22,572 bases of DNA from Selaginella moellendorffii. Its lineage: Eukaryota > Plantae > Lycopodiophyta. Each line of letters starts with the position of its first letter. Positions within the stretch are counted from its first letter, which is position 1. The notes beneath the pieces are model-generated. The model saw only the letters and a list, made by a program, of their open reading frames with translations, made no database searches and was not told where the DNA came from. A program made the translations under genes and the position numbers. The stretch lies in the NCBI RefSeq assembly GCF_000143415.4, contig NW_003314325.1:1-22572 (forward strand). The letters run 5' to 3'. Positions 1,032-21,400 of the stretch are shown in pieces.

Positions 1032-1289
1032 AATGGTTGATATTAAATAAGATTAATCTTGTGTCTATAAATTATCAATATCTTTATAATTATAAACGTT
1101 TCTTTGATCAAATGGATTAATATATAAGAATAATATTACTATTAAGAATTAAGTATTATTGCATGCAACGGGCACCAAATTATTTGTTTGCTTAACCAAA
1201 CCTATAAGGGGATAGTGATTATACCTAGAATATGCTTGAATATTCTAGGATATTCTACCATCTAACAGTACTATTAAACAAATTAAGCA
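1030..1289. repeat. AT-rich palindrome-dense repeat, partial copy
   Basis: Matches 11592-11830 fused to about 12031-12050. Contains AAGATTAATCTT (1049-1060), TTTATAATTATAAA (1083-1096), TTTGATCAAA (1103-1112), TTGCATGCAA (1159-1168) and the hairpin CCTAGAATAT-N6-ATATTCTAGG (1224-1249). Confidence 0.85.
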
Positions 1290-1389
1290 NNNNNNNNNNN
1301 NNNNNNNNNNNNNNNNNNNNNNNNNNNNNNNNNNNNNNNNNNNNNNNNNNNNNNNNNNNNNNNNNNNNNNNNNNNNNNNNNNNNNNNNN
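1290..1389. other. Assembly gap (100 N, probably a placeholder size)
   Basis: Exactly 100 N. The two flanks map only about 20 bp apart in copy B (about 12050 and 12073). Confidence 0.97.
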
Positions 1390-1458
1390 AAATTATTTCT
1401 ACTTGTGATAATATTTATTCAAACAGAATCAAAATATAAAACAATTTATGTTATGACT

Positions 1459-1670
1459 CATGTCCAGAGAGGTATATGTCCATGAGAGAGGTCCCCTTGG
1501 TCCACAAAAGCCAGAGCTCAAGCATGCACGGCTTTGCCTTTAGAACTCAAAAACTCCAAGCTTAACAATGTATTGGTCAACAATCTGATCCTGTGCAGTA
1601 AGAATTGTGATGTGATTTGGAGAACCATTCTTATCCACTTGCTTGCCTTTGCCATAACCAAAACTGAGGC
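1459..1670 (-). pseudogene. Old CpG-decayed PPR fragment forming the 3' tail of the protease ORF
   Basis: Aligns to PPR about 4119-4392 (gtccacaaaagc.agagctc.agcatgcacgg; aagcttaac; acaatctg; aaccattct; cataaccaa) with many CpG>TpG/CpA changes. Confidence 0.85.
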
Positions 1671-2543
1671 CCTTTTTTTTTGGTGGCACCAACATAAACT
1701 ATCTGTCTCTGTAACAAATCTATCTTTACTGACTTCAAATACACCATTTGGATATTGAAGTCTATACCAGCAACCCAATTCACTAGATTTAAAAGTAACA
1801 ATATGATTCCTGAAGTCAATTATTGCTGAGTGCTTCTTAAGCCAATTCATCCCCAAAATTATGGTATCTATATTCTCTTTTATACCAATAAAATCTGTAC
1901 TTTCTGAAAAGCTTCCCATTTTATACGTTAAATTCTCAATTCCATAACCATCTTTCATTTGCACATCTGCAGTTAATCTTTTTGTAAAATACTTGTAATC
2001 ACGAATTGCTTTGAGCCCAAGTTTCTTGAGAAGTTGAAGTGATATAGCTGACCAATCAGAACCATTATCAAATTCAATTGTGATGTGATGATCATTGATT
2101 CTCCCACTGTATTCTGCATAATGAAAAGTAGTACATATATGTTGATTTATTCTCTTGTATTTTCTGCACTTATATAATTGGTAGTGATCATCAAGGGCAC
2201 CATCAATCTCCTTGAGGCAATATATAGAATTATTGACCTCAAAAGTTAAACTGTTTATAGTGCCACTGCAGTCTAACTCTAAGCAATGTTGATGTATCCA
2301 AGGTGAACCCAAAATTATATCATGATCAAGAATCAATGGTTTTACAGTCAAACTTGTTTTAAATTCACAATCCTCCACCATAAACTTGAAATCTTTAACT
2401 TGTGAATTACTGTCCACAGTAATATTGAATTCATCTACTAATTTCTGTGAGATAATATCACGGTCACAACCAGAATCCCAAAAAACATTGATTTTCCTCT
2501 CCAACCCATGATCCCCAGATAACCTTCCAAAAGTTTCTGCCAT
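1518..2543 (-). CDS. Tandem two-domain retropepsin-like (Ty3/gypsy RVP-type) aspartic protease, 341 aa, with PPR-derived read-through tail
   Basis: ATG at 2543 (the track start at 2546 is TTG). Lobe 1: VFWDSGCDRDIIS...DHDIILGSPWIHQH (D23). Lobe 2: IEFDNGSDWSAIS...DTIILGMNWLKKHSAIIDFRNHIVTF (D159). Intronless and visibly more AT-rich than neighbouring genes. Expression unknown. Confidence 0.75.
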   Translation of the reverse strand: MAETFGRLSGDHGLERKINVFWDSGCDRDIISQKLVDEFNITVDSNSQVKDFKFMVEDCEFKTSLTVKPLILDHDIILGSPWIHQHCLELDCSGTINSLTFEVNNSIYCLKEIDGALDDHYQLYKCRKYKRINQHICTTFHYAEYSGRINDHHITIEFDNGSDWSAISLQLLKKLGLKAIRDYKYFTKRLTADVQMKDGYGIENLTYKMGSFSESTDFIGIKENIDTIILGMNWLKKHSAIIDFRNHIVTFKSSELGCWYRLQYPNGVFEVSKDRFVTETDSLCWCHQKKRASVLVMAKASKWIRMVLQITSQFLLHRIRLLTNTLLSLEFLSSKGKAVHA

Positions 2544-2544
2544 C

Positions 2545-2593
2545 AAACCCTAAATTCCCTACCCTACAGATCCTAGAGTGTGGGAATTTATAA
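2545..2593 (-). promoter_or_regulatory. Putative TATA box and telo-box upstream of the protease ORF
   Basis: TTATAAAT on the minus strand (2593-2586), and AAACCCTAA at 2545-2553 directly next to the ATG. Confidence 0.4.
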
Positions 2594-2684
2594 GCCGTCA
2601 ACTCTTTCCCTTTTATTTGTTGCGTGTTCAACCCTACAAAGTCAAAAAGTTACTACACCACCAAAACTGAGTTTTTTCACCGTA

Positions 2685-3366
2685 TCCGCAAACCTGGAGA
2701 TCACAGGATCAAAAAGCTTTCTTTCGCTGTCAATGTTTTCACCTCGTTCTTCCATTTTTCTAACTTCCACTGGCTACGTTGATCCAAAGCACACCATCAT
2801 CCACGTTCAAGCGCTCTTCTTCCTGTCGCAAATTCATGGATTGAACAAAGTTTGTACAAGCCAAGTGACGCAAATTTTACAAAAAACCAGACAACATGTC
2901 ATTTTAAGCCTTTTGGACAGCCACTTCAAGAACTCACTCGCAAGAAGGGAAGCTCATTCGACACACGAAAAGTATGCAAGCCAAGCAAGACAGAAGAAAA
3001 ACGAGAGGAAACACGAGCGTTTGTGGCTCTACCAACACGAGTGACATATCCATGGTAAGCTTGCGGAGCTGCTTGTTTAACAAGGCCACTGCTGGTTGGA
3101 AGGTCACAAAGGCATGTTGAGCGAGAAAATGATAAACATCGGGGGCCAATGGGACCAGAAACTTCCATGCTTTGCTGTAGGATTAGGCAACGATTACATA
3201 CCTTTAAACCGCTTCCCCTCTCCTTGCTTTATCCTTGTTCTTCGCTGTTCTTCGCTTGTGTTCTGTTCCTTTCTCTTGAGTCCCCATGCCTTCCTGTTAA
3301 AAGAAGCATTAAATCGTTCCAACAACTGTTTCCTATGATGTTGGAGTTGTAAATCCGACTGACCTC
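2685..3366 (-). repeat. ~680 bp intron/exon-like module of unknown identity, copy 1
   Basis: Recurs at 13432-14075 (diverged) and 14076-14623 (near-identical, partial). The minus strand has short intron-like segments (GTCAGT...TTAACAG, GTATGT...CCAACCAG, GTGAAA...CTCCAG). Confidence 0.75.
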
Positions 3367-5455: not shown

Positions 5456-5548
5456 CAGGACAGACTATGGATTCTACGAAGGCCGTAGTAAGAAACGATA
5501 AAGCGAGCTCAAAATTTTCATACCTTGAGCCTGATCAGTTCACCGCTG

Positions 5549-5757
5549 CTAAAAAACCTGCAACGTTTCAAGTTCCTTCAATGCAGCAAGATCGCTTGAC
5601 TTATCCCTCGACAAGCACCAGCTCTACGTCAATATCTCTGCAAGAAAAAGGAAATAAGAAAATCACCTGGATGCTAGAAAAGAATAGCCAGTTACCTGCG
5701 TAAGGACAAAACTTCCAAGTTTTTCTCAAGCAACACGGAATGCTCTTTGAGAGCATC
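5549..5757 (-). pseudogene. OEX2: Collapsed remnant of the 5'-3' exonuclease gene 3' end
   Basis: Encodes DALKEHSVLLEKNLEVLSLR, then the intron, then a chimeric last exon. Relative to copy B it lacks one ~170 bp repeat unit and about 340 bp (about 17131-17472). Confidence 0.8.
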
Positions 5758-6064
5758 TGGACAATTGTACCCTAAATATTTTTAAAAATTTCTGTCGATG
5801 CTACATTCTTCCCTCCCAGAATCGAAATCCAGCCACTGGTGCGGCAGAAATCCGAGCGCAAGCTCCATCCGCGGCGGCGTTGGCTTGGAAATCGCTCGAT
5901 CGAGAGAGAACTCTCGCGGCTAAGCGCCCGGACCAGGCAGTGGGAGAATGGAGGATGAAAGTCAGCCGCCTTGGATCAAATTCACAAAATGACAACAGAT
6001 TGCCGCTCGATACATGGCCTCGCGCCCTTTCTTTCGACGATCTCACAGCACCACGAGCTCGGCC

Positions 6065-6393
6065 TCATCCTGCTCCTGCTCCCCTCGCTGCATCACGATT
6101 CTTGGACGTCTTCTTCTCTGAAACAGCAAGATTTCAGCTCGCGAGCCAGAGATCGAGAGAGAAAGAGAGAATCTTTGCCAAGATTTCGAGTGTGAGGGAG
6201 AGATTGAGAGTGAGGGAGAGATATTTCGGGAGAGATTGCACGAAATTTCACCTTGCGCAGCTTGAGCCTTGGCCCTTTCCTTGTCCTGGCGCTGCCGTTG
6301 GGATTCACTGATCCCGCGACGTTCCTTCCTCGGCATTCTCCTCTTCCCCTTCTTCTCGTTGTCGGCTGCCCTCGTCGAGCTTTTGCCCGCCAT
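6065..6393 (-). CDS. Putative two-exon small basic hydrophilic protein, 64 aa (copy A)
   Basis: Exon 6393-6252, CT-rich GT-AG intron 6251-6118, exon 6117-6065. Product MAGKSSTRAADNEKKGKRRMPRKERRGISESQRQRQDKERAKAQAAQEKKTSKNRDAARGAGAG*. ATG context gcgATGGCG. Indels versus copy B preserve frame and stop. Confidence 0.55.
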
Positions 6394-6477
6394 CGCACTT
6401 CCTCCACACAAAAAACCCTCGCAACGAAGCAATGAAGAAGAAACGAATATTCATGTTTTTAAATTTATTCCCGCCCT

Positions 6478-6635
6478 CGCATACAAGATCCTAGCCGACC
6501 ACGTGGCGAGGCGAGCGATTCAAATGAATTACCATGCCAGCCGAGCATTACCATGGCGTTCTTTGTTTTTAATTTGACGGCGTAAGCTCTGGTGACTGCC
6601 CCGCATACACGATCGTCGCCGACCACGTGGCGAGG
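6478..6635. promoter_or_regulatory. Divergent promoter with a 34-bp direct repeat carrying DRE core GCCGAC and G-box/ABRE CACGTGGC
   Basis: cgcataca.gatc.t.GCCGACCACGTGGCgagg occurs at 6478-6511 and 6602-6635, between head-to-head ATGs at 6393(-) and 6764(+). Confidence 0.6.
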
Positions 6636-6763
6636 CCATGGTGGCCGTGGCAGCAGACCATTTCCAGGTTTAACGACTAACTGCTATAACATTGTCACGC
6701 GAACAGAGTGGCGGCAGCTCCGGCGGCGCAATGCTCTCGGGGTAGCGCGAGCATGATCCAGCC

Positions 6764-8014
6764 ATGGAAGCTCTCAATGGCGTCAAGAAGAGGCATTTCA
6801 GGGTAGAGGGTTTCCAGTGGCCCTTCTCGCGCGTGGCTATGGAGTGGAGGCCTGGCGCCGGCACCGCCAAGCGCAAGAAGATCTCCAGCGACATCAATGT
6901 CGCCACTCCTCCTCCTCCTCCTTTACTTCCTCACCCTTCCTCACTCCTCTCCCTCCGGCAGCTCAATCACTCACCACCACCGCACGATCCAAACTTTCTC
7001 CGCGCGCTCCAGGCCAATGCTCTTCGGACAATGTCGGTGAATGGGAAGGGCTTCCTATCGAATCCTTGGTCGAACAGGGCAGCTTGGTCCAGGGTCGGGT
7101 CGAAGAAGGATCACGGTGGGGATTTGATGAACAAGAAGAGGCAGCTGGAGCTGTGGGACTTGGCGGGGTTCTCTCGTGAGAAGTTAAAGCTTCTCAAAGA
7201 GATTGAGGCGCTCATCGACTCGGAGGAGAATGCTTTGAACATGGAAGCTTCTGCTAAGGTTGGTCGAAGGCTCCTTCTTTCTTGAGTTTAGACCATCGTT
7301 TTATTTCTTCTTTCTTCTTTATAGGCCGCGGAAGGACGTCTTCGAAGCTTGCTGGATATCTGCGTATGCTCTCAATGCCAGGAGAATATAGAGAACAGGA
7401 TAGCTCTACAAAGCGTGAGAACCAAAGGTTTGGACGATGGCAAGGTTATTTCAGCAAGAACGAATGTAGCGACTGCAAAGCAAGAGGATCAGACAGCACC
7501 AGCGCTGGAAGGTCCCAAAACCACGAAGGTGACACTTAGATATAGTTTTCTAGGTCGGAAGTATTGATTCGGTTGCGTGTTCTCAGCTTCCAGAAACGAT
7601 GAAGAGAGATTTCACGAAGCAGGAGTCTCTCGAAAAGGAAAAAGAGAAGGAGAGGCGCTTCTTTCTTGGAAATGTGAAAGAAGCCATGGAGCGTGACCGG
7701 GTTGCGCTTGACAACTTTCTGCAGAAGCAGAGGCTCAAGCATGAAGTGTCTAAGCAGAAACTTGGCGAGGTGAAGGGGAGCTTTCTTGGGAAGTATCTGA
7801 GCTTTCTTGACAACTCACTGGACGATGCTCTCCAAAAGGACGATTTAAGCGACAAGCACGACCAGGTTTTCAAGTCTTTTACGTGTTGCTTTATTTGATC
7901 TCGAGGTCTCACTTTAGATTTCCTGTGTTAGGATTCAGAAGGTTTGGAGGATCCTTCCAAACTTCGCAAGGATCAAACTCCTGAGCTGGAACGATCTTCT
8001 GAAAAGTCAGATGA
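6764..8014 (+). pseudogene. 3'-truncated copy of the coiled-coil gene (exons 1-3 and start of exon 4)
   Basis: Near-identical to 18469-19701. Homology stops abruptly at 8014 inside exon 4. Confidence 0.88.
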
Positions 8015-8813
8015 AGTAACCGCGCGAACTTAACTTAGCTTTGCTGGCGCCGCCTTGTCTAGACACTAGAAAACGGAGGACATGCCTCGTAGTGAACTGA
8101 AGCCAATCCGGCAGCCAGATTGCGAGAAGGCTGGTAGACCGCTTAAACCGAATCGCCACGAGGAGTTTGCGGGAACCAAGGCTTAAGCACTTCCATAGGA
8201 GTTCTTGACAGAGAGATCAGGTGTCATGCTGCCAGGCTGCTAGGATTGTCTTCCAGACAACCTCTACACCCAAGACGTTTGATCGGCTTGGATCGAACGT
8301 AACAAGAAGAATACTCCAGGATTTTATGTGATCCAACACCTCCAGATGGTCAATGTGATCTTTCTTTCAGTAAGATATTTTTCTTCACTGGCTAGACTAG
8401 GCTCTCGCAACAATGGGGCGATCCGATGCTCGAAGAGGCTGACCGACGCAAATCCGCCGCCCCTATCTTCCATCGGATTAAGCTCTCTGTGCGACCGACG
8501 ATGAGAATGGGAGCTCGAGAATGAGTCCAGTGTCAAGGTACGAGCTTGACCCCAGGGCAAGCTTTTCTACAATCGCGTTGGAACCTTCGTTCGAGAAAAA
8601 TCTCGAGGTATGGAGACAGCAATTCCACCGCTAACTAAGGTTCGCGCCTAGATCAAACTATTCATAGCAAGCTCTTGTATGATTCCAGATCAAGTCCAAT
8701 CTCGCCGAGAAACATTGACGAACTGCCGAGTTTTCTGTATCTCCGGAAGTTTACGAGGCAAACATTTTTGTTTTAAATTTCAAATGAACGAATATACTTC
8801 GACTTGGGCGGGA

Positions 8814-9569
8814 CATTTCCAGGTTTAACAACTAACTGCGAGTGGCAGCAGCTCCGGCAGCCTCGGTGGTAGCGCGAGCATGACCCAGCCATGGAAGCTC
8901 TCAATGGCGTCAAGAAGAGGCATTCCAGGGCAGAGGCTTTCCAGTGGCCCTTCTCGCACGGCCTGGCGCCGGCACGACCAAGTGCAAGAAGATCTCCAGG
9001 GACATCAATGTCGCCACTCCTTTTCCTAGGCTAATGCTCTTCGGACAATGTCGGTGAATGGGAAGGGCTTCCGATAGAATCCTTGGTCAAACAGGGCAGC
9101 TTGGTCCATGGTCCAGAGCACTCGGCTCGAAGAAGGATCATGGTGGGGATTTGATGAACAAGAAGAGGCAGCTGAAGCTGTGGGACTTCGGGGGGTTCTC
9201 TAGTGAGAAGTTAAAGCTTCTCAATGAGATTGAGGCGCTTATCGACTCCAAGGAGAATGCTTTGAACATGGAAGCTTCTGCTAAGGTTGGTCGAAGGCTC
9301 CTTCTTTCTTGAGTTTAAACCATCGTTTTATTATTTCTTTCTTCTTTCTAGGCCGTGGAAGGACGTCTTCAAAGCTTGCTGGATATCTGCGTATGCTCTC
9401 AATCCTAGGAGAATATACAGAACAGGATAGCTCTACCGAAAAGTAAAGAGAGAAGGAGAGGCCCTTCGTTCTGGGAAGTGTGAAAGAAGCTATGGAGCGT
9501 GACCGGGTTGCACTTGACAACTTTCTGCAGAAGCAGAGGCTCAAGCATGAAGCGTCTAAGCAGAAACTT
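8814..9569 (+). pseudogene. Degenerate third copy of the coiled-coil gene 5' end
   Basis: ATGGAAGCTCTCAATGG at 8891 and LGSKKDHGGDLMNKKRQL...NMEASAK. Multiple internal deletions and frameshifts; ends at cagaaactt in exon 3. Confidence 0.9.
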
Positions 9570-9930: not shown

Positions 9931-10601
9931 ATGGCAAAGGATGAGTTTAATATTACTATTAACAGTAACTCAAAGTTTATGAGTGAAGTTATGAGGACTT
10001 TGACTGTATTACCAATGATTCTTGATTATGATATAATTTTAGGTTCACCTTGGATACATAAACATTGCTTAGAGTTAGACTGCAATAGCATAATAAATAC
10101 TCTAACATTTGAGGACTACATATTGCCTCATGGGTGATTACAACTTATCTAAGACCAGAAAAATACAAGAGAATAAATCAACATATACATACTGTGGGAA
10201 ATCAATGATCAGAAAATCAGAATTGAAATAGATAATGGTTGTGCAAGTTCTGGAATACTTATCAGGAAACTCGGGGTTAAAGTAGTTCACGATTCCAAGT
10301 ATTTTGCAGAAAGGCTAACTCCATAAGTTCAAATGAAAGTTATGGAATTGGTATGTTATAACTAAACTTTTTAGAAAGAAGAAATTTTATTGGTCTAGAA
10401 GATTATAGAGAAACCATATTTCTTGGGATTGACTGGCTTCATAATCACTCAGCAATAATTAACTACAGGAATCATATTGCTACTTTTATATCCAAAGAGT
10501 TGGATTGTTGGTATAGATTTCAATACCCATCTGGTATATATGAAGCAAGTAAAGATAGATTTGGCAAAGAGATGAGTAGTTTGTGTTGGTGCTCATTTTG
10601 A
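9931..10601 (+). pseudogene. Diverged, inverted, decayed paralog of the tandem retropepsin-like ORF
   Basis: Shares the start context aatttagggtttgATGGCA. Encodes DYDIILGSPWIHKHCLELDC, INDQKIRIEIDNGC, TIFLGIDWLHNHSAIINYRNHIATF and ELDCWYRFQYPSGIYEASKDRF...LCWCSF*. The lobe-1 DSG segment is deleted, and there are frameshifts and an internal TAA. Confidence 0.88.
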
Positions 10602-11449
10602 CCACAAATTTAATAAATACTTTTTTAGCACAGTCCATTTTGTTTGGTTTGTTTTGCATTACCAGATTATGGTCTTTTCATGCCTTTCCATTGTTGGTAA
10701 TTCTTTTGAAGAAATAGAACGTGGGAACGACTACATTAATTATGGGAAATTGACTACAAGTTATATATGTAATTTTCTTTAGTATATGTGAAAGTTAGCA
10801 CAAAGGTGATTGTTTTGGTATGTACATAGTATAAGTCTGCCTCCTTGATCAAGTTATGATCAAGTTACGATGGAGCCAGAGATCACAAATCAGAGGTAAC
10901 ACTTAAGTAGTTTAGTAATCTTCAAAATAATGGTGCATGCCATGTATAGACATGTATTTATTCCAAGTCATAAGTTTGTATTTTATACATTTAGAAAAAA
11001 AGAAAACTATGTAGAAAATTTGGATAAATTTTTGTCATAAGAAATACTAAATGAAATATTATAGTTGTTCAAAGTTCTAATCTATGTTGGTGCTTAGTGT
11101 TAGACAATTTTAATAAATAATTTCAATCAAATATACCACGAATATCCAATAATATTTCAATCCAATGCTAAATAAAAAACTAATAAAATAACAATAATGT
11201 AAATATAAATAAGATATACCTGGCGTTTAATTTGGGTTAATATAAATGAAACCATAATTGTTTCAAATTAAAAAAATGAATAATATTTTTTAATAGTGAG
11301 TATTCTTTATAACTATAATATTATTTTGAAAATATAAATAATCATTCTCTTTCTGTAAAACTTTATACATATGTATAAATATATATGTTATATTTTTTAG
11401 TGAAAATTTTATTTGTAGTTTTCAATTTATCTAAATTTTTGGTTTTCAT

Positions 11450-12090
11450 AAGCAAACCTGTAGAAGGGTAGTGGATATATCTAAAATATGCTTGGATATT
11501 TTAAGATATTTTCTAACAGTTGTTATTCAATTAAATTAATCTTGTAAACTTTCCTAAACACTTCTTAATATATTCTAGTTTATTCTACAGTCAAATGGTT
11601 GATATTAAATAAGATTAATCTTGTGTCTATAAATTATCAATATCTTTATAATTATAAAAGTTTATTTGATCAAATGGATTAATAAATAAAAATAATATTA
11701 CTATTAAGAATTAAGTATTATTGCATGCAACGTGCACCAAATTATTTGTTTGCTTAACCAAACCTATAAGGGGATAGTGATTATACCTAGAATATGCTTG
11801 AATATTCTAGGATATTCTACCATCTAACAGTTGTTATTCATTTAGATTAATCTTGTATCTCTAATTTATAAATATTGTTTTAATTTATATAAACACTAAA
11901 CGCTTTCTAGGATATTCTAGTTTATTCTACTATCATATTCAATAAGATTAATCTTGTGTTTATACATTATCAACATGTTAAAAATTATAAACTTTAATTG
12001 ATCAATTGGATTAATTTAGAGAAATAACACTACTATTAAACAAACTAAGCATTGAATGTAGCAATGTGTAGCAAAGTATTTCTACTTATG
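11450..12090. repeat. AT-rich imperfect tandem dimer (~310-335 bp units) with iterated palindromes
   Basis: Unit anchors: caaacct.ta...atatgcttg.atatt at about 11453 and 11759; aataagattaatcttgtgt at about 11608 and 11941; tactattaa at about 11699 and 12031. Confidence 0.8.
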
Positions 12091-12140
12091 ATAATATTTA
12101 TTCAAACAGAATCAAAATATAAAACAATTTATGTTATGAC

Positions 12141-12375
12141 ACATGTCCAGAGAGGTATATGTCCATGAGAGAGGTCCCCTTGGTCCACAAAAGCCAGAGC
12201 TCAAGCATGCACGGCTTTGCCTTTAGAACTCAAAAACTCCAAGCTTAACAATGTATTGGTCAACAATCTGATCCTGTGCAGTAAGAATTGTGATGTGATT
12301 TGGAGAACCATTCTTGTCCATCCTAAAGAATTGCTCCAGAGCTTGCTTGCCTTTGCCATAACCAAGACTGAGGCC
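12141..12375 (-). pseudogene. Old CpG-decayed PPR fragment forming the tail of protease ORF copy B
   Basis: The tail VLVMAKASKLWSNSLGWTRMVLQITSQFLLH matches the off-frame PPR reading LLVMLRTAKASKLLRYSLAWTRMVALQIVSQFLLH (ORF 4278-4481). The final GKAVHA matches in-frame PPR RGKAVHA. Confidence 0.88.
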
Positions 12376-13247
12376 CTTTTTTTTTGGTGGCACCAACATA
12401 AACTATCTGTCTCAGTAACAAATCTATCTTTACTGACTTCAAATACACCATTTGGATATTGAAGTCTATACCAGCAACCCAATTCACTAGATTTAAAAGT
12501 AACAATATGATTCCTGAAGTCAATTATTGCTGAGTGCTTCTTAAGCCAATTCATCCCCAAAAATATGGTATCTATATTCTCTTTTATACCAATAAAATCT
12601 GTACTTTCTGAAAAGCTTCCCATTTTATACGTTAAATTCTCAATTCCATAACCATCTTTCATTTGCACATCTGCAGTTAATCTTTTTGTAAAATACTTGT
12701 AATCACGAATTGCTTTGAGCCCAAGTTTCTTGAGAAGTTGAAGTGTTATAGCTGACCAATCAGAACCATTATCAAATGCAATTGTGATGTGATGATCATT
12801 GATTCTCCCACTGTATTCTGCATAATGAAAAGTAGTACATATATGTTGATTTATTTTCTTGTATTTTCTGCACTTATATAATTGGTAGTGATCATCAAGG
12901 GTACCATCAATCTCCTTGAGGCAATATATAGAATTATTGACCTCAAAAGTTAAACTGTTTATAGTGCCACTGCAGTCTAACTCTAAGCAATGTTGATGTA
13001 TCCAAGGTGAACCCAAAATTATATCATGATCAAGAATCAATGGTTTTACAGTCAAACTTGTTCTAAATTCACAATCCTCCACCATAAACTTGAAATCTTT
13101 AACTTCTGAATTACTGTCCACAGTAATATTGAATTCATCTACTAATTTCTGTGAGATAATATCACGGTCACAACCAGAATCCCAAAAAACATTGATTTTC
13201 CTCTCCAACCCATGATCCCCAGATAGCCTTCCAAAAGTTTCTGCCAT
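12201..13247 (-). CDS. Tandem two-domain retropepsin-like aspartic protease, 348 aa (copy B)
   Basis: ATG at 13247, DSG at 13181-13173, DNG at 12773-12765, two (I/F)LG..W motifs. Differs from copy A by 7 aa substitutions in the protease part and a 21-bp indel in the tail. Confidence 0.75.
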   Translation of the reverse strand: MAETFGRLSGDHGLERKINVFWDSGCDRDIISQKLVDEFNITVDSNSEVKDFKFMVEDCEFRTSLTVKPLILDHDIILGSPWIHQHCLELDCSGTINSLTFEVNNSIYCLKEIDGTLDDHYQLYKCRKYKKINQHICTTFHYAEYSGRINDHHITIAFDNGSDWSAITLQLLKKLGLKAIRDYKYFTKRLTADVQMKDGYGIENLTYKMGSFSESTDFIGIKENIDTIFLGMNWLKKHSAIIDFRNHIVTFKSSELGCWYRLQYPNGVFEVSKDRFVTETDSLCWCHQKKRASVLVMAKASKLWSNSLGWTRMVLQITSQFLLHRIRLLTNTLLSLEFLSSKGKAVHA

Positions 13248-13248
13248 C

Positions 13249-13290
13249 AAACCCTAAATTCCCAAAATCCTAGAGTGTGGGAATTTATAA
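13249..13290 (-). promoter_or_regulatory. Putative TATA box and telo-box upstream of protease ORF copy B
   Basis: TTATAAAT on the minus strand (13290-13283) and AAACCCTAA at 13249-13257. Confidence 0.4.
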
Positions 13291-13431
13291 GCCGTCAACT
13301 CTTTCCCTTTTATTTGTTACGTGTTCAACCCTTTGAGCTCGAGAACATCCTCTTGTTAGCAACCAAGTGAACATCGATGTCCTTGTTGCGCCAAAAAGTA
13401 ACCTCATCGCCGAGACCGAGTGTTTCCAGTG

Positions 13432-14075
13432 TCCGCAAACCTGGAGATCACAGGATCATTTCTTTTGCTGTCAATGTTTTTACCTCGTTCTTCCATTTTC
13501 CTAACTTCCACTGGCTACGTTGATCCAAAGCACACCATCATCCACGTTCAAGCGCTCTCCTTCTTGTCGTGTAAGATGCAAATTCATGGATTAAACAAAG
13601 TTTCTACAAGACAAGTCACGCAAATTATCCAGACAACATGGCATTTTAAACCTTTTGGACAGCCAGAATAAGGGAAGCTCATTCGACACACGAAAAGTAT
13701 GCAAGCAAGCAAAACAGAAGAAAAACGAGAGGAAACACGAACTTTTGTGGCTCTACCAACATGAGTGACAAATCCATGGTAAGCTTGCGGAGCTGCTTGT
13801 TTAACAAGGCCACTGCTGGTTGGAAGGCATGCTGAGCGAGAAAATGATGAACATTGGGGGCCAATGGGACCAGAAACTTCCATGCTTTGCTGTAGGATTA
13901 CGCAACGATTACATACCTTTAAACCGCTTCCCCTCTCCTTGCTTTATCCTTGTTCTTCGCTGTTCTTTGCTTGTGTTCTGCTCGTTTCTCTTGAGTCCCC
14001 ATGCCTTCCTGTTAAAAAAAGCATTAAATCATTCCCACAACTGTTTCCCACGATGTTGTAAATCCGACTGACCTC
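13432..14075 (-). repeat. Intron/exon-like module, diverged copy
   Basis: Aligns end to end with 2685-3366 with many substitutions and small indels. Confidence 0.85.
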
Positions 14076-14623
14076 CTTCCTGTCGCAAATTCATGGATTG
14101 AACAAAGTTTGTACAAGCCAAGTGACGCAAATTTTACAAAAAACCAGACAACATGTCATTTTAAGCCTTTTGGACAGCCACTTCAAGAACTCACTCGCAA
14201 GAAGGGAAGCTCATTCGACACACGAAAAGTATGCAAGCCAAGCAAGACAGAAGAAAAACGAGAGGAAACACGAGCGTTTGTGGCTCTACCAACATGAGTG
14301 ACATATCCATGGTAAGCTTGCGGAGCTGCTTGTTTAACAAGGCCACTGCTGGTTGGAAGGTCACAAAGGCATGTTGAGCGAGAAAATGATGAACATCGGG
14401 GGCCAATGGGACCAGAAACTTCCATGCTTTGCTGTAGGATTAGGCAACGATTACATACCTTTAAACCGCTTCCCCTCTCCTTGCTTTATCCTTGTTCTTC
14501 GCTGTTCTTCGCTTGTGTTCTGTTCCTTTCTCTTGAGTCCCCATGCCTTCCTGTTAAAAGAAGCATTAAATCGTTCCAACAACTGTTTCCTATGATGTTG
14601 GAGTTGTAAATCCGACTGACCTC
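14076..14623 (-). repeat. Intron/exon-like module, near-identical partial copy
   Basis: Matches 2819-3366 at a constant offset of 11257. Confidence 0.9.
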
Positions 14624-16655
14624 GGGCATAGATGTTGGACGTGAGAGAGTACGCAGAGCCTGTTCCATCGTCGAGCTTGAGAACCGACTTGAAGGCCATC
14701 CTGCCAAGCTCCACATTTCTCCACTTGAGGCACGAACTTAAGAATGCCATCCACACCACCGCGTCCACCTTGCAAGGCCACGCTCTTTGAGCGCCTCGTT
14801 TTGAGCGAAAGAACTTCCCACCGATGCCTCTGTATCCAGTCCAGCACTGCAAGCTTGTACGTGAATCTGCTGCCCGAAGTCCAGTGCTGCAAGGCTCAGC
14901 GCAGGCTTTGAGAGCAGCAACGTACGTCCGGTTACAAGCTTTTCTCGTGCAGCAACCGAGTGTAGAACTCCAGAGCTCGCTCGGGTTCTCCAAACCGACT
15001 ATATCCCAAGATCAAGGGGCCTTTGATGCTGTGAAGACTTCCGCCATGCTTTGACACTTGGTATACATATCCACCGAAAAGTAGTCATCCAGTTCGCAAA
15101 TCCTTGCGACTTGCAAGTGGAGAGCTCTGCCTTTCTCCAGCTATTTCTTCACAAGCTTGCGGTCTTCATTCTCTGCTAGAGTCGCAACAGCCTTAAATGC
15201 AGCAGTAGCAGTGACATGATCTGCCTTAACACCTTCCTCTTGCATGCTTTCGAACGATTGTAAGACGAGCTTGTGCTGGCCGCCGCAAGCATACCCCAGG
15301 ATTATCCCCGTCCAAGTCGCACCACCATATCTTGGAAAACCACCCAAGCATCCACCATGCCTCCACACTTGGCGTACATGTCAACGAGAGCATTATGAAC
15401 CGAGAGGTCTTCTCCGTCCACAAAAGCGAGAGCTCGAGCATGCACGGCCTTGCCTCTCTGCAAAGCCCGAAGCTTAACGACGCCTCCGTCGACAATCTGG
15501 CCCTGTTCCTTCTCAGCCAAGGTGACACAGGCCTTTAGTGCAGCAAGAACTGTGACACGATCTGGAGCGCAACCATTCTCGTCCATGCTAAAGAATATCT
15601 CAAGAGCTTGCTCGCCTTTGCCGTTCTGAGCATAACCAAGAGTGAGGCAGTTCCAAGAAACCACGTCTGGACGTTCAATACTGTCGAAGAAACTGCGAGA
15701 CTCCACCATGCTCCCACAGTTGGCATAGAACTCCACAAGTGTGTTGGTCACTACTGAATCTTCAAGACTTCCGTTTCTTCTTCACCATAAACAACTGATC
15801 GATCCATCGATGGGGGAACAAACATGCCACGAATGCGTGCCGGGGCATGGGCAAGTTCCTCGTCCGCAAGACGGCAACAAGCTTTCAGCGCTGCGATGAA
15901 AGTTAAAGCATCCGGTGGAGTGTCTCCACGACGCATTCGAGCATAGATATCGAGAGCTTCACCACCCTCGCCGCTGCTGGCATACCCGAGAATCATGCAG
16001 TTCCATGTCACCACACTACGATGGCTCATTCCTTCGAAAACTCGACGAGCCTCTGTCAAGCTCCCACATTTTGCGTAAAGATCAATCAAGGTGCTCGCGA
16101 CGAAGAGATCCGAGTCTAAGCCAAGTTTTACTGCTTTCCTGTGAATCTCCCTGCTCCTCTCTAAGAATACCACCCGTTGACCATCCAAAGCCTGCCCGGA
16201 ATCCTTCTCTATCAAGCTGGAACAAGCCTTGAGAGCACCAGGAACTGATACTCGATCCGGTTTGTACCCTTCGTCTCCCAGAGGAGCAAACAACTGTAGA
16301 GCCATTTCACCATTTCCACTCTGTGCATATCATATCCCTGTACGATCGAATTCCAGGAGACAACATCGCGATGTGGCATGCTGTCAAATGTTCCACGAGC
16401 ATCTATCATGCTTCCGCATTTCGCGTACAGATCAAGCAGGATGTTGGCGACGATAATGTTTGAGAAGTCACCTGTCTCGGAAACATCCCTGTTAATTCTC
16501 CTGCCTAGTTGTAGATCTTTCATGCTTCTACATACCTTGAGAGCACCAACAACAATGCCAATGGCTGGTTTCAATCCCTGACGTTGCATTCGTCTGTACA
16601 CTTCATTTGAAAGACCCTGAGGTTTCTGCAGAAGTGGACCAACCTTCGCTTCCAT
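14624..16655 (-). pseudogene. PLS-class PPR gene with E domain, frameshifted, copy B
   Basis: Same motifs and same lesions as 3367-5455, plus a 58-bp deletion that splits the 353-aa ORF into 184 and 149 aa pieces. Confidence 0.92.
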
Positions 16656-16898
16656 CAAGGACAGACTATGGATTCTACGAAGGCCGTAGTAAGAAACGAT
16701 AAAGCGAGCTCAAAATTTTCATACCTTGAGCCTGATCAGTTCACCGCTGCTAAACAACCTGCAACGTTTCAAGTTCCTTCAATGCAGCAAGATCGCTTGA
16801 CTTATCCCTCGACAAGCACCAGCTCTACGTCAATATCTCTGCAAGAAAATATATTAAAATCACCTGGATGCTAGAAACGAATAGCCAGATACCTCTGT

Positions 16899-17473
16899 TT
16901 AGACACAATGCAGCATTTCAATTTCTTTCTCCAGCCACTGCAATGCAGCAAGATCGTTTGACTTATCCCTGGACAAGCACCACTCAACTGGTAGCTCTAC
17001 GTTAATATCTCTGCAAGAAAAAGGAAATAAGAAAATCACCTGGATGCTAGAAAAGAATAGCCAGTTACCTGCGTAAGGACAAAACTTCCAAGTTTTTCTC
17101 AAGCAACACGGAATGCTCCTTGAGAGCATCTTGCATGTATGGCTTCACAACCGTCCGAATTGCCGCTGCACTTACTAGATTTTCTAGCGAGCCGTGCTTC
17201 CTCATAAGTTTCAGAGCTGTAAAACCAGGCACACCGGGAACACCATCAGCAGCATACCCTAGCACAAGCGCTCACACACTCGCGACTCCAAGCTCAAGCA
17301 CAAACGAGAATGACTTACAGTGAAAACGAGATGCCATCCGACTTGCTCCCGCAGTAGCAAAGCGGCCATCCGATGGAGCTCGCCGTGGCGCCACCAGGAA
17401 CTGGGGATTCCGAGCTCGCCCTGGCGCCATTCTGAGCGGGAGCGCGCTGTGCGATCCAAGACGCGGCCGCCAT
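16899..17473 (-). pseudogene. OEX2: Internally deleted organellar 5'-3' exonuclease gene (putative first exon plus last two exons)
   Basis: ATG at 17473 reads MAAASWIAQRAPAQNGARASSESPVPGGATASS... (Ala/Ser-rich, transit-peptide-like) up to a GTAAGT donor near 17319. It is then fused to LGYAADGVPGVPGF-TALKLMRKHGSLENL (GRK deleted, D>Y) and the last exon DINVELPVEWCLSRD. The nuclease core exons are missing. Confidence 0.75.
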
Positions 17474-17781
17474 GGACAATTGTACCCTAAATATTTTTAA
17501 AAATTTCTGTCGATGCTACATTCTTCCCTCCCAGAATCGAAATCCAGCCACTGGTGCGGCAGAAATCCGAGCGCAAGCTCCATCCGCGGCGGCGTTGGCT
17601 TGGAAATCGCTCGATCGAGAGAGAACTCTCGCGGCTAAGCGCCCGGACCAGGCAGTGGGAGAATGTAGGATGAAAGTCAGCCGCCTTGGATCAAATTCAC
17701 AAAATGACAACAGATTGCCGCTCGATACATGGCCTCGCGCCCTTTCTTTCGACGATCTCACAGCACCACGAGCTCGCGGCC

Positions 17782-18089
17782 TCATCCTGCTCCTCTCTCT
17801 GCATCGTTCCCGCGCGTCTTCTTCTCTGAAACAGCAAGATTTCAGAGATCGAGAGAGAAAGAGAGAATCTTTGCCAAGATTTCGAGTGTGAGGGAGAGAT
17901 TGAGAGTGAGGGAGAGATATTTCGGGAGAGATTGCACGAAATTTCACCTTGCGCAGCTTGAGCCTTGGCCCTTTCCTTGTCCTGGCGCTGCCGTTGGGAT
18001 TCAGTGATCCCGCGACGTTCCTTCCTCGGCATTCTCCTCTTCCCCTTCTTCTCGTTGTCGGCTGCCCTCGTCGAGCTTTTGCCCGCCAT
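17782..18089 (-). CDS. Putative two-exon small basic hydrophilic protein, 61 aa (copy B)
   Basis: Exon 18089-17948, GT-AG intron 17947-17826 (122 bp, CT-rich), exon 17825-17782. Product MAGKSSTRAADNEKKGKRRMPRKERRGITESQRQRQDKERAKAQAAQEKKTRGNDAERGAG*. An AT-rich TATA-like tract lies about 65-75 bp upstream. Confidence 0.55.
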
Positions 18090-18173
18090 CGCACTTCCTC
18101 CACACAAAAAACCCTCGCAACGAAGCAATGAAGAAGAAACGAATATTCATGTTTTTAAATTTATTCCCGCCCT

Positions 18174-18340
18174 CGCATACAAGATCCTAGCCGACCACGT
18201 GGCGAGCGAGCATGATGCCACAGTTCAAATGAATTACCATGCCAGCCGAGCATTACCATGGCGTTCTTTGTTTTTAATTTGACGGCGTAAGCTCTGGTGA
18301 CTGCCCCGCATACACGATCGTCGCCGACCACGTGGCGAGG
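18174..18340. promoter_or_regulatory. Divergent promoter with twin GCCGACCACGTGGC (DRE core + ABRE/G-box)
   Basis: Motif starts at 18190 and 18323, between ATGs at 18089(-) and 18469(+). Confidence 0.6.
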
Positions 18341-18468
18341 CCATGGTGGCCGTGGCAGCAGACCATTTCCAGGTTTAACGACTAACTGCTATAACATTGT
18401 CACGCGAACAGAGTGGCGGCAGCTCCGGCGGCGCAATGCTCTCGGGGTAGCGCGAGCATGATCCAGCC

Positions 18469-21400
18469 ATGGAAGCTCTCAATGGCGTCAAGAAGAGGCA
18501 TTTCAGGGTAGAGGGTTTCCAGTGGCCCTTCTCGCGCGTGGCTATGGAGTGGAGGCCTGGCGCCGGCACCGCCAAGCGCAAGAAGATCTCCAGCGACATC
18601 AATGTCGCCACTCCTCCTCCTCCTCCTTTACTTCCTCACCCTTCCTCACTCCTCTCCCTCCGGCAGCTCAATCACTCACCACCACCGCACGATCCAAACT
18701 TTCTCCGCGCGCTCCAGGCCAATGCTCTTCGGACAATGTCGGTGAATGGGAAGGGCTTCCTATCGAATCCTTGGTCGAACAGGGCAGCTTGGTCCAGGGT
18801 CCAGAGCACGCTCGGGTCGAAGAAGGATCACGGTGGGGATTTGATGAACAAGAAGAGGCAGCTGGAGCTGTGGGACTTGGCGGGGTTCTCTCGTGAGAAG
18901 TTAAAGCTTCTCAATGAGATTGAGGTGCTCATCGACTCGGAGGAGAATGCTTTGAACATGGAAGCTTCTGCTAAGGTTGGTCGAAGGCTCCTTCTTTCTT
19001 GAGTTTAGACCATCGTTTTATTTCTTCTTTCTTCTTTATAGGCCGCGGAAGGACGTCTTCGAAGCTTGCTGGATATCTGCGTATGCTCTCAATGCCAGGA
19101 GAATATAGAGAACAGGATAGCTCTACAAAGCGTGAGAACCAAAGGTTTGGACGATGGCAAGGTTATTTCAGCAAGAACGAATGTAGCGACTGCAAAGCAA
19201 GAGGATCAGACAGCACCAGCGCTGGAAGGTCCCAAAACCACGAAGGTGACACTTAGATATAGTTTTCTAGGTCGGAAGTATTGATTTGGTTGCGTGTTCT
19301 CAGCTTCCAGAATCTCTCGAAAAGGAAAGAGAGAAGGAGAGGCGCTTCTTTCTTGGAAATGTGAAAGAAGCCATGGAGCGTGACCGGGTTGCGCTTGACA
19401 ACTTTCTGCAGAAGCAGAGGCTCAAGCATGAAGTGTCTAAGCAGAAACTTGGCGAGGTGAAGGGGAGCTTTCTTGGGAAGTATCTGAGCTTTCTTGACAA
19501 CTCACTGGACGATGCTCTCCAAAAGGACGATTTAAGCGACAAGCACGACCAGGTTTTCAAGTCTTTTACGTGTTGCTTTATTTGATCTCGAGGTCTCACT
19601 TTAGATTTCCTGTGTTAGGATTCAGAAGGTTTGGAGGATCCTTCCAAACTTCGCAAGGATCAAACTCCTGAGCTGGAACGATCTTCTGAAAAGTCCGATG
19701 ATCGTACCGAAGAATCTATTACAACTAGAGAAGCTGGAAGAAAACCTGCAGACGTTTCGCTTAGCACAGACGCGAAAAAGCTTCACGAGACAATTCACAA
19801 GCTGCTGGACAAGAACAAGCAGCTCCAGGAGATGCTCTCCGGGCGACAAAACTCGCACGATCATCAAAGACAGAACGTTAACGGGCTGGAGCACATTACA
19901 AAGCTGGAGATTTCTTGCAGCTGCAAGAGTCCGTGGGAGATGAGGCCCCCGAGAATTTTCAACTTCACCAGAAAGACGACGTCGAGAGTGTTGCAAACTT
20001 CTGGAGAGCTTGATATTGGGAGTCTTGAGGAAACTGCAGGGACAAGAACAGGCTACGAGGGGTTTCCTCAAGGCTACTCGTACCTCTACGTCTCTCCAGC
20101 TTTCGAGGCAGAAAATGTCGACCCGAACACGCAAACTCGTGACGAAGATCGCTCTGCTAGTAAACACGTTGTGACGAATCCCGTGAAGCTTCACAAGCTA
20201 AAGCAAGAACAGGAGGTGACGCACAGCCAGGAACAGAACTTTTGTCCAAAGGTACCTGAGTTCTTTGATGAAACTTAGCCGGTCTTTCAATCTTTTGTTA
20301 TTTTACTCCAGTTCAAGCTCTCGTCACTGCCGGCGTTATGCAGCAGCTTCACACAAACAACATGTGATTCCAGAGGTTTGAAGCAGCTTGATTTACAACA
20401 GCCGAAAGTTCGTCCCCAGTTAGAAGAGAGTAAAGCGAAAACTGATGAACATTCACTAGTAGAAAGACAAGACAAAGCTGTCGACGCTGGAGACTCGAGT
20501 GATGAAACTGATGTTTCTAGCGCAATGCTTATAGACGTCATCAGGTAATGCTTGCTCAATAGCGTTACTCGTTCTAAACTGTTTGTACTTCAGGAACTGG
20601 AGGATGCAAGCTTTAGTACCGAAAGATTTGCTGGAAAACAAAGACTCGTGTACTCAGACTGCTGTAAGCTTGACCGAGGTTGGACAAATCACAGAGGGAA
20701 AGCCTGTTGTCGAGAAATTCACACAAGGTGGAGGAAAATCTTTCGTCTTCATTTTTCACCTTAGCTGACGAAACTACTTGTTAATTACTAGGAGATGCTT
20801 TGCTAGAAATCTCACTTCTGTGCCAAGAAGAAGAGAATAAACTGAAAGCTTTGGAGGAACTTGATGTCAAGGACTCTCACAACAATCTATCAGAAACCAC
20901 GGAAAGCTTTTCCAGTGACGAGCTCATTGAGGTAATGAATCTAGTTTCTTTTCCTCTTCTTTTCATTTACAGAAGTACTTACAGGTGACGACTCAACTTT
21001 CCGAAAGCGTCGAGGGCGTTGCGAGAGATCGGTCAACCGAACAACTGGAGGCTGCGTTCAAGAGAAAAGTAAGTTTCTTTTGAAGATCCTGAAGTAGAAA
21101 GGAAGCCTAGCTAATGTGGTCACTTTAGTCCAGGAAGAGGATCTTGAGAACATAGTTCACATGTTGAGCTCCAAACTGGTGGAAAGCCAAGATAAAGCTG
21201 ATGCGCTAGAGAAATCTCTCGCAGAGAAGAGCTTCAAGGTGGAAGAGATGCTCGAGGCCTTGAAGACTTTTCAAGCCGAGGAATCCCAGGACAGCTGCAA
21301 AAGGATTGCAGCACTGGAGCAAGCTTTAGCCGAGAAAAGCTTTAGCATGGACCAGATGTCTCGGGCCTTGGCCACTGCGAATTCCTACGCCGAGCAGCTG

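What the first reader, a model, noticed from the sequence alone, without database searches (positions are those of the whole stretch)
12201..13247. Stand-alone single-chain protein with two tandem retropepsin-like lobes (DSG + DNG) and no gag/RT
Seen: one intronless ORF has two complete motif sets, FWDSG...DIILGSPW and FDNG...DTI(I/F)LGMNWLKKHSAIIDF, 136 codons apart. It has its own ATG and a TATA-like box, and no gag, RT, RNase H or integrase is recognisable in the window. There are two intact copies and one diverged relic. Established: retroviral and Ty3/gypsy proteases (clan AA) are single-lobed homodimers cut from a polyprotein, and bilobed pepsins are thought to derive from duplication of such a lobe. 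Inference: this is a lineage-specific family, either domesticated or carried by an unusual non-autonomous element, that has independently fused two retrotransposon protease lobes into a pepsin-like pseudo-dimer. Caveats: DNG departs from D[T/S]G, so lobe 2 may be non-catalytic, and the A/B differences are mostly non-synonymous, so these two copies show no sign of current constraint.
Basis: partly seen in the sequence, partly recalled or inferred. Interest (0 to 1): 0.8.

Follow-up and report, generated by a model that had tools for sequence, protein, structure and literature searches.

The report
Two-lobed retropepsin-like ORF in Selaginella
A spikemoss (Selaginella moellendorffii) scaffold carries an unannotated reading frame with two retrotransposon-type aspartic-protease domains in one chain; it stayed open in one lineage while sister copies decayed, so it may be a natural single-chain form of an enzyme that normally works as a pair, but expression, fold and activity are unproven.

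Summary
On the minus strand, 12201-13247 (copy A) and 1518-2543 (copy B) are intact ORFs. Each has DSG...ILG and DNG...(F/I)LG motif sets 136 codons apart. A decayed copy lies at 9940-10592 (+). Lobe 2 passes Pfam thresholds (gag-asp_proteas, RVP_2). Lobe 1 does not, but a profile-profile comparison with four unrelated retropepsin domains supports it (P 1e-6, score 42 against 11.8 +/- 2.0 for shuffles), with the motifs in register. No gag, RT, RNase H or integrase is present. The window is S. moellendorffii scaffold GL377629.1. The ORF is not annotated and has no relative outside this genome except generic retropepsins.

New points:
- The last ~60 codons are an out-of-frame reading of PPR-gene-derived DNA, not protease.
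- The copies spread by inverted, segmental and tandem duplication of a host locus (unknown gene / protease pair / PPR / exonuclease), not by transposition.
- DNG is ancestral to all copies.
- A versus B is uninformative on selection, but the A lineage has no stop where about 4.8 are expected if neutral (P about 0.009), and its branch dN/dS is about 0.45.

Both AlphaFold models failed (pLDDT about 37), so the pseudo-dimer idea is untested. Verdict: a real two-lobed retropepsin-like ORF, possibly exapted, with function unproven.

The parts
12201..13247 (-). Copy A: intact ORF of 348 codons plus stop
12912..13244 (-). Copy A lobe 1 (aa 2-112), retropepsin-like, with DSG at 13173-13181 and ILG at aa 77-79
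   Evidence: hhalign against outside retropepsins: P 1e-6, 104 columns, motifs in register. Pfam RVP_2 reaches only 15 bits, E 0.02, below threshold.
12810..12911 (-). Copy A inter-lobe linker (aa 113-146)
   Evidence: It lies between the matched stretches.
12486..12809 (-). Copy A lobe 2 (aa 147-254), retropepsin domain, with DNG at 12765-12773 and FLG at aa 229-231
   Evidence: Pfam gag-asp_proteas 33.8 bits, RVP_2 31.6 bits and Asp_protease_2 25.8 bits, all above gathering score. hhalign P 5e-18.
12204..12389 (-). Copy A tail (aa ~287-348): read-through into PPR-gene-derived DNA, translated out of the PPR frame; not protease
   Evidence: tblastn and blastn to the neighbouring and paralogous PPR gene. 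GC rises from 31-33% to 42%. A and B differ here by a 21-nt indel.
13283..13289 (-). TATA-like box 36-42 nt upstream of the ATG of copy A
   Evidence: Read directly; function not tested.
1518..2543 (-). Copy B: intact ORF of 341 codons (lobe 1 at 2208-2540, lobe 2 at 1782-2105)
   Evidence: A copy with the same protein sequence (one synonymous difference) is on scaffold GL377827.1 (L002 6514-7536).
9940..10592 (+). Decayed copy (relic) covering aa 37-286 in inverted orientation to copy A; broken by 5 in-frame stops and at least 1 frame change
10593..12200 (.). Very A+T-rich spacer (15-32% GC) between the tail-to-tail inverted copies; no ORF of 70 aa or more
14598..16655 (-). Neighbouring PPR-E gene copy (unit 2), broken relative to the intact 826-aa paralogue in L003; unit 1 copy at about 3341-5447
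6764..8186 (+). Neighbouring gene of unknown function (392-aa product, no Pfam hit); second copy from 18469, partial copy at 8862-9569

Best explanation
Shown:
- This is a Selaginella-specific ORF whose first ~286 codons are two diverged clan-AA retropepsin-like domains in one polypeptide.
- It sits in an A+T-rich island (31-33% GC) between host genes of about 50% GC.
- It multiplied as part of the host locus: first as a tail-to-tail inverted pair, then by segmental duplication to a second scaffold, then by recent tandem duplication (units about 11 kb, 97-99% identical).
- One lineage (A, B and the GL377827.1 copy) kept the frame open while the other copies decayed.

Inferred:
- The sequence came from an LTR-retroelement protease region. 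Best Pfam families are RVP_2 and gag-asp_proteas, and the base composition is foreign to the flanks.
- The A/B lineage was held under purifying selection for much of its history, meaning it was exapted or at least long expressed.
- If made, the protein folds as an intramolecular pseudo-dimer. Lobe 1 would give a canonical DSG loop and lobe 2 an ancestral DNG loop to one cleft. A 34-residue linker would replace the intermolecular dimerisation that single-lobed retropepsins need.
- With Asn in place of Thr/Ser in one loop, the cleft would be asymmetric and possibly weakened. A substrate-binding, non-catalytic role is as likely as full endopeptidase activity.
- The last ~60 residues are an accidental extension.
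For: - Lobe 2 passes Pfam thresholds.
- Lobe 1 against four outside retropepsin domains: hhalign probability 91%, P 1e-6, score 42, against shuffles of 11.8 +/- 2.0 (max 17.5). DSG falls on the D[T/S]G column and ILG..W on the ILG.DW column.
- There are no other retroelement domains in the window.
- Flanks of the copies are homologous on both sides, in the window and in L003.
- DSG and DNG are present in every copy that covers them, so the two-lobe design predates the duplications.
- Branch dN/dS by three-point distances: A 0.45 (bootstrap 0.27-0.92), L003 copy 0.73, relic 0.88.
- On the A branch (0.107 substitutions per site) about 4.8 new stops are expected if neutral, P(none) 0.009. The sister copies carry 4 and 5 stops, close to their own expectations of 3.75 and 7.1, plus 2 and at least 1 frame changes.
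- In the window the neighbouring PPR gene is broken while this ORF is intact.
Against: - The ORF is not annotated and its protein is absent from a 15-billion-protein collection that includes assemblies of sequencing runs.
- No expression data could be consulted.
- No orthologue was found in any other species.
- A versus B gives 8 non-synonymous to 3 synonymous changes, dN/dS 0.63, which cannot be told from neutral.
- The C-terminus is junk sequence with an indel between A and B.
- The A-branch signal comes mainly from lobe 1. Its upper bootstrap bound is 0.92, and it rests on a star tree of three lineages.
- The intact copy was noticed because it is intact, which is an ascertainment bias. Correcting for three lineages gives P of about 0.03.
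- Lobe 1 fails the Pfam threshold, and PDB sequence search finds nothing for it.
- AlphaFold gave no usable model, so lobe packing is pure analogy.
- DNG departs from the catalytic signature.
Confidence: 0.5

Rival explanations
1. Neutral relic: a fragment of a dead retroelement's protease region was copied passively with the host locus. The A/B frame is open by luck or because constraint was lost only recently. No protein is made.
For: - Unannotated and absent from protein collections.
- Sister copies are all decayed.
- It lies in a degenerate, duplicated scaffold end with broken PPR copies and an assembly gap.
- The tail is out-of-frame PPR DNA.
- A versus B dN/dS of 0.63 is not different from 1.
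- dN on the A branch (0.084) is about the same as on the decayed L003 branch (0.078).
- No homologue exists in other species.
Against: - P(no stop) is about 0.009 on a neutral A branch, before counting frame-shifting indels.
- The branch dN/dS bootstrap interval excludes 1.
- All four motif sets are intact in A, B and the L002 copy.
- An ATG lies 22 codons before DSG, with a TATA-like box upstream.
Confidence: 0.35
2. The ORF is cargo of an unrecognised mobile element (non-autonomous, or a retroelement family with a duplicated protease) that is or recently was moving.
For: - A+T-rich island with sharp compositional edges.
- Retroelement-type Pfam families.
- Several copies exist in the genome.
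Against: - Every copy seen has the same host neighbours on both sides, so all are explained by locus duplication.
- No LTRs, terminal inverted repeats or other element genes surround the roughly 0.9-kb unit.
- No closer gag-pol relative exists among 1.84 billion representative proteins.
Confidence: 0.08
3. Only lobe 2 is a retropepsin domain. The DSG and ILG of lobe 1 are chance motifs in an unrelated N-terminal region.
For: - Pfam gives lobe 1 only 15 bits (E 0.02), over the ILG half alone.
- phmmer against PDB and against 1.84 billion proteins finds no lobe-1 relative outside the family.
- Lobe 1 against lobe 2 gives BLASTP E 0.15 and hhalign P 0.04.
- There is no confident structure.
Against: - hhalign against a profile built only from outside proteins gives P 1e-6 over 104 columns, about 15 sd above shuffles.
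- Both motifs fall on the right columns at the right spacing.
Confidence: 0.07

Closest known systems
Ty3/gypsy (Metaviridae) LTR-retrotransposon proteases: Pfam RVP_2 (PF08284) and gag-asp_proteas (PF13975)
   Same: These are the best family matches for lobe 2. The outside hits P0003-P0005 are of this type, and P0004 also has Retrotrans_gag and Ty3_capsid. Both lobes have the D-x-G ... hydrophobic-hydrophobic-Gly-x-x-W layout.
   Different: Those proteases are single lobes cut from gag-pol and act as homodimers (PMC2642776). Here two lobes share one chain, there is no gag or pol, the ORF has its own ATG, and one loop is DNG.
Host single-domain retropepsin-like proteins: Ddi1/Ddi2 (Pfam PF09668) and ASPRV1/SASPase
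   Same: They are host-encoded retropepsin domains without RT. They are the only solved structures with any sequence match to lobe 2: Ddi1 4z2z/2i1a at E 0.04, ASPRV1 at E 0.7. The best outside hit, P0002, is Ddi1-type.
   Different: They have one lobe per chain plus a ubiquitin-like or other partner domain. PF09668 scores 20.6-23.4 bits, below its threshold of 26. The foreign A+T-rich composition argues against descent from a host gene.
Pepsin family A1 (bilobed single-chain aspartic proteases)
   Same: The architecture matches by analogy: two homologous lobes, each with an Asp loop and a hydrophobic-hydrophobic-Gly, and little other similarity between lobes (PMC2761423, PMC2642776).
   Different: There is no Pfam pepsin-type hit. 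The lobes here are about 110 residues and of retroelement type. The common cleft is not shown.
Bacterial proteins with tandem Asp_protease_2 domains (recalled from memory of domain-architecture listings; not checked here)
   Same: They would be natural single chains with two retropepsin-like domains.
   Different: They are bacterial, often with extra domains. No such protein came back in any search here, so there is no evidence of relationship.

Membership tests
Retropepsin-like domain (clan AA; Pfam RVP_2 / gag-asp_proteas / Asp_protease_2) | Match to a family model above its curated threshold: lobe 2 | tested here: met
   33.8, 31.6 and 25.8 bits against cut-offs of 28.2, 20.3 and 24.3 in copy A; higher in copy B.
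Retropepsin-like domain (clan AA; Pfam RVP_2 / gag-asp_proteas / Asp_protease_2) | Match to a family model above its curated threshold: lobe 1 | tested here: not met
   RVP_2 reaches 15.1-15.3 bits against a cut-off of 20.3, E 0.02, over the ILG half only. Homology is supported only by hhalign, P 1e-6.
Retropepsin-like domain (clan AA; Pfam RVP_2 / gag-asp_proteas / Asp_protease_2) | Catalytic Asp-Thr/Ser-Gly loop | tested here: inconclusive
   Lobe 1 has DSG (met). Lobe 2 has DNG in all copies (not met). One outside retropepsin-like protein, P0005, also has DNG.
Retropepsin-like domain (clan AA; Pfam RVP_2 / gag-asp_proteas / Asp_protease_2) | Hydrophobic-hydrophobic-Gly about 55-70 residues after the Asp | tested here: met
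   ILG lies 54 residues after D23; F/ILG lies 70 residues after D159.
Retropepsin-like domain (clan AA; Pfam RVP_2 / gag-asp_proteas / Asp_protease_2) | Beta-barrel retropepsin fold | tested here: inconclusive
   AlphaFold2 gave pLDDT 37.8 with a single sequence and 37.3 with a 6-row alignment. Fold search was not run on such models.
LTR retrotransposon (Ty3/gypsy) element | gag, RT, RNase H and integrase in the same unit | tested here: not met
   No such Pfam hit in 51 ORFs of 70 aa or more.
LTR retrotransposon (Ty3/gypsy) element | Flanking long terminal repeats | tested here: not met
   The repeats found are the locus-scale duplication units and the inverted copies themselves.
Pepsin family A1 | Match to pepsin-type family models | tested here: not met
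   No pepsin-type family at E<=1.
Ddi1-like (A28) | PF09668 above threshold, plus a ubiquitin-like domain | tested here: not met
   20.6-23.4 bits against a cut-off of 26; no other domain.
Domesticated (exapted) retroelement gene | Intact ORF kept under purifying selection | tested here: inconclusive
   A-branch dN/dS 0.45 (0.27-0.92). P(no stop if neutral) 0.009. A versus B 0.63 on 11 substitutions.
Domesticated (exapted) retroelement gene | Syntenic orthologues in related species | not testable with these tools
   No plant-genome DNA search was available. Protein searches found none.
Domesticated (exapted) retroelement gene | Expression | not testable with these tools
   No gene is called over the ORF, and the exact protein is not on record.

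The most novel reading that the evidence does not exclude
A naturally selected single-chain pseudo-dimeric retropepsin. A land-plant lineage would have fused two retroelement protease lobes (DSG + DNG) into one expressed host protein with one asymmetric active-site cleft. That would independently repeat the duplication-fusion step proposed for the origin of pepsins.
Probability: 0.22. Interest if true: 0.75.

Novelty: new variant of a known kind. Interest (0 to 1): 0.45.

Why it matters
Retroelement proteases are the textbook single-lobed, obligate-dimer aspartic proteases. Pepsins are thought to descend from duplication and fusion of such a lobe (PMC2642776, PMC2761423). A natural eukaryotic chain with two retroelement-type lobes, one carrying a non-canonical DNG loop that has been kept since before the copies diverged, would be a young and sequence-traceable example of that transition. 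It would also add a plant case to the short list of host proteins built from retroelement proteases. If instead it is an untranscribed relic, it is only an unusual fossil that records a rearranged or duplicated protease region in an extinct Selaginella element.

Tried and rejected
- **rDNA idea.** An ~11-kb tandem unit with mixed GC suggested rDNA. Rfam and tRNA scans were blank, so this was rejected.
- **Word-index protein searches.** The whole protein, lobe 1 alone and lobe 2 alone all came back blank.
- **Exact look-ups.** The proteins of A and B are not on record.
- **Other libraries.** NCBIfam and PHROGs gave nothing useful. PDB sequence search with lobe 1 gave no hit even at E 10.
- **Structure.** AlphaFold2 was run twice, with a single sequence and with a 6-row alignment. 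Both gave pLDDT of about 37, and both jobs are spent. Fold search was therefore not run, because matches to such models are meaningless.
- **Promoter and terminator scan.** The bacterial scan is irrelevant to a plant and was no better than shuffles.
- **Tandem-repeat finder.** It found nothing in the A+T-rich spacer.
- **Literature.** Searches for natural tandem or single-chain retropepsins in eukaryotes or retrotransposons found none. One query had a malformed term.
- **Left out on purpose.** I ran no scan of viral contigs with this retropepsin-like protein, since it could fetch retroviruses of animals. Branch estimates used pairwise distances only.

Full report
**Where the window comes from**

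An exact look-up of the neighbouring PPR protein places window 1-22572 at the start of scaffold GL377629.1 of assembly GCA_000143415.2. A family fragment occurs in protein EFJ13091.1, SELMODRAFT_424830, of Selaginella moellendorffii. The organism is therefore a lycophyte: not a crop, an animal or a human contig.

**Observation**

- The ORF is on the minus strand. Copy A is 12201-13247 (348 aa from the ATG). Copy B is 1518-2543 (341 aa).
- Both copies have DSG (aa 23-25) with ILG (77-79), and DNG (159-161) with F/ILG (229-231). The two Asp residues are 136 codons apart.
- A TATAAAT lies 36-42 nt upstream of the ATG.
- A decayed copy lies on the plus strand at 9940-10592.
- Pfam scans of 51 ORFs of 70 aa or more found only PPR, E motif and a 5'-3' exonuclease fragment. 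There is no gag, RT, RNase H, integrase or zinc knuckle.
It omitted only the strand.

**Are both lobes retropepsin-like?**

Lobe 2 (aa 147-254) passes the curated thresholds of gag-asp_proteas, RVP_2 and Asp_protease_2. It weakly matches solved Ddi1 and ASPRV1 structures by sequence.

Lobe 1 alone gives only RVP_2 at 15 bits, E 0.02, covering the ILG half. It gives nothing against PDB sequences.

I then built a profile from the retropepsin domains of the four outside proteins returned by the exhaustive HMMER search: P0002 (Ddi1-type) and P0003-P0005 (RVP_2 type, one with gag). I compared this profile with lobe 1 of A and B.
- hhalign gave probability 91%, P 1e-6 and score 42 over 104 columns.
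- Forty column-shuffled versions of lobe 1 scored 11.8 +/- 2.0, with a maximum of 17.5.
- DSG falls on the D[T/S]G column and I-L-G-x-x-W on the I-L-G-x-D-W columns.
- The same profile matches lobe 2 at P 5e-18.
- Lobe 1 against lobe 2 directly is weak: BLASTP E 0.15 and hhalign P 0.04.

I conclude that both lobes are retropepsin homologues. They are not a recent internal repeat. The arrangement is either an old duplication or a fusion of two different protease sequences.

**The ORF end is not protease**

- Homology among the copies stops at about aa 286.
- Residues 292-324 of copy A match, at 73% identity, a translation of the neighbouring PPR gene's DNA. That translation is in a frame other than the PPR frame.
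- Conversely, the PPR protein matches window 12168-12372 in a frame other than the ORF's.
- GC rises from 31-33% in the protease part to 42% in the tail.
- A and B differ in the tail by a 21-nt in-frame indel.
- The last ~60 codons are therefore an accidental read-through into a PPR-derived fragment.

**How the copies arose**

- Self-comparison shows two units, about 1030-8014 and 11592-19701, that are 97-99% identical.
- Scaffold GL377827.1 (L002) carries a copy that differs from B by one synonymous site. It bridges the 100-N gap at 1290-1389 and runs on into the start of a further copy.
- A paralogous locus on GL377635.1 (L003) has the same order: unknown gene (+), protease copy (+), fragment of an inverted protease copy (-), spacer, PPR gene (-), 5'-3' exonuclease gene (-).
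- Nucleotide identity between L003 and the window is about 90% in the PPR gene, 78% in the protease region and 71-74% in the spacer.
- The ancestral state was thus a tail-to-tail inverted pair of the ~0.9-kb two-lobed unit between two host genes. All later copies are explained by duplication of the locus.
- Nothing indicates transposition. There are no terminal repeats around the unit.

**State of the copies (counts only)**

| Copy | In-frame stops | Frame changes |
|---|---|---|
| A, B and the L002 copy | 0 | 0 |
| Window relic | 5 | at least 1 |
| L003 (+) copy | 4 | 2 |

The L003 (-) copy is reduced to a short fragment. DSG and DNG are present in every copy that covers those columns, so DNG is ancestral and not a recent lesion.

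**Selection**

- A versus B: 8 non-synonymous and 3 synonymous differences, dN/dS 0.63. With 11 changes this cannot be told from 1.
- I applied the three-point formula to pairwise Nei-Gojobori distances, without any ancestral reconstruction. Branch dN/dS values are A 0.45 (bootstrap 0.27-0.92), L003 copy 0.73 and relic 0.88. The A signal comes mostly from lobe 1.
- Nucleotide branch lengths are 0.107 (A), 0.084 (L003) and 0.160 (relic).
- 134 of the 2574 possible single-base changes in the 286-codon protease part give a stop. A neutral A branch therefore expects about 4.8 new stops, and P(none) is 0.009.
- The same calculation predicts 3.75 and 7.1 stops for the two decayed copies, against 4 and 5 observed.
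- Allowing for the fact that the intact lineage was the one noticed, P is about 0.03. This is moderate evidence that the A/B lineage was held open by selection for much of its history. It says nothing firm about the present.

**Against a working gene**

- No gene is called over the ORF in either scaffold.
- The exact proteins are absent from a collection of 15 billion proteins.
- The only family member among predicted proteins is a gene model whose last exon runs into the decayed L003 copy.
- No relative in any other organism is closer than generic retropepsins at 25-32% identity to lobe 2.
- In the window the region is degenerate: both PPR copies are broken relative to the intact 826-aa L003 paralogue.

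**Structure**

AlphaFold2 with a single sequence gave pLDDT 37.8. With a six-row alignment it gave pLDDT 37.3. Both are unusable. Whether D23 and D159 meet in one cleft was therefore not tested. The only hint, at low confidence, is a short helix predicted right after each hydrophobic-hydrophobic-Gly, as in retropepsins.

**Mechanism I commit to**

This is a retroelement-derived, two-lobed retropepsin-like protein. If expressed, it forms an intramolecular pseudo-dimer with an asymmetric DSG/DNG cleft. A 34-residue linker removes the need for dimerisation. It has reduced or altered catalytic power, or a binding role. My confidence is about 0.5 that the ORF is or recently was a selected coding sequence of this kind, and about 0.35 that it is a neutral relic.

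**Comparison with known kinds**

- It is closest to Ty3/gypsy proteases in sequence, and to Ddi1 and ASPRV1 in being host-located without RT.
- It is analogous to pepsins in architecture only.
- It is not a member of an LTR element, of family A1 or of the Ddi1 family. Defining features of each were tested and not met.
- The clan-AA survey (PMC2642776) describes retroelement and host retropepsins as single-domain. My literature searches found no natural eukaryotic tandem.
- From memory only, some bacterial proteins carry two Asp_protease_2 domains. This was not checked.

The tables printed by my scripts show the bounds of the separate frame pieces of the decayed copies. The motif table shows a stop symbol at one named column of one decayed copy. 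I noticed this.

No collection of viruses was scanned.

Noticed in passing
window 3341-5447(-) and 14598-16655(-); L003 13078-15558(-): The PPR-E gene next to the ORF is broken into several frame pieces with in-frame stops in both window units. Its paralogue in L003 is an intact 826-aa ORF. This is the reverse of the protease copies, which are intact in the window and broken in L003.
   Followed up: partly
window 1290-1389: A 100-N assembly gap lies 130 bp downstream of copy B. Scaffold GL377827.1 (L002) bridges it with about 21 bases and continues into a further unit, so the array has at least three units or the short scaffold is a haplotig.
   Followed up: partly
L003 8001-9837(+) (P0001, SELMODRAFT_424830): The annotated 418-aa gene model of the unknown gene ends in an exon taken from the decayed lobe 1 of the L003 protease copy. 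This is probably an annotation artefact.
   Followed up: partly
window 9999-10114(+) versus 12941-13056(-) and 2237-2352(-): A 116-nt patch around the lobe-1 ILG region is 88% identical between the relic and copies A and B, while the rest is 76-77%. This may reflect gene conversion between the inverted arms, or it may be chance.
   Followed up: no
window 13578-14075 and 14085-14623: There is a local ~0.5-kb tandem duplication (88% identity) in unit 2 between the ORF and the PPR gene. Unit 1 has a single copy.
   Followed up: no
window 11000-12000: A stretch of 15-24% GC lies between the inverted copies. It has short dispersed internal repeats, no ORF and no tandem array.
   Followed up: partly
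window about 16900-17450(-) and about 5600-5760; L003 15705-17000(-): Fragments of a 5'-3' exonuclease gene (PF01367 and PF02739 in the L003 paralogue) belong to the duplicated unit.
   Followed up: no
P0005 and P0003 (outside hits): Two other retropepsin-like proteins in public data also depart from D-T/S-G. P0005 has DNG, and P0003 has Asn at the Asp column.
   Followed up: no
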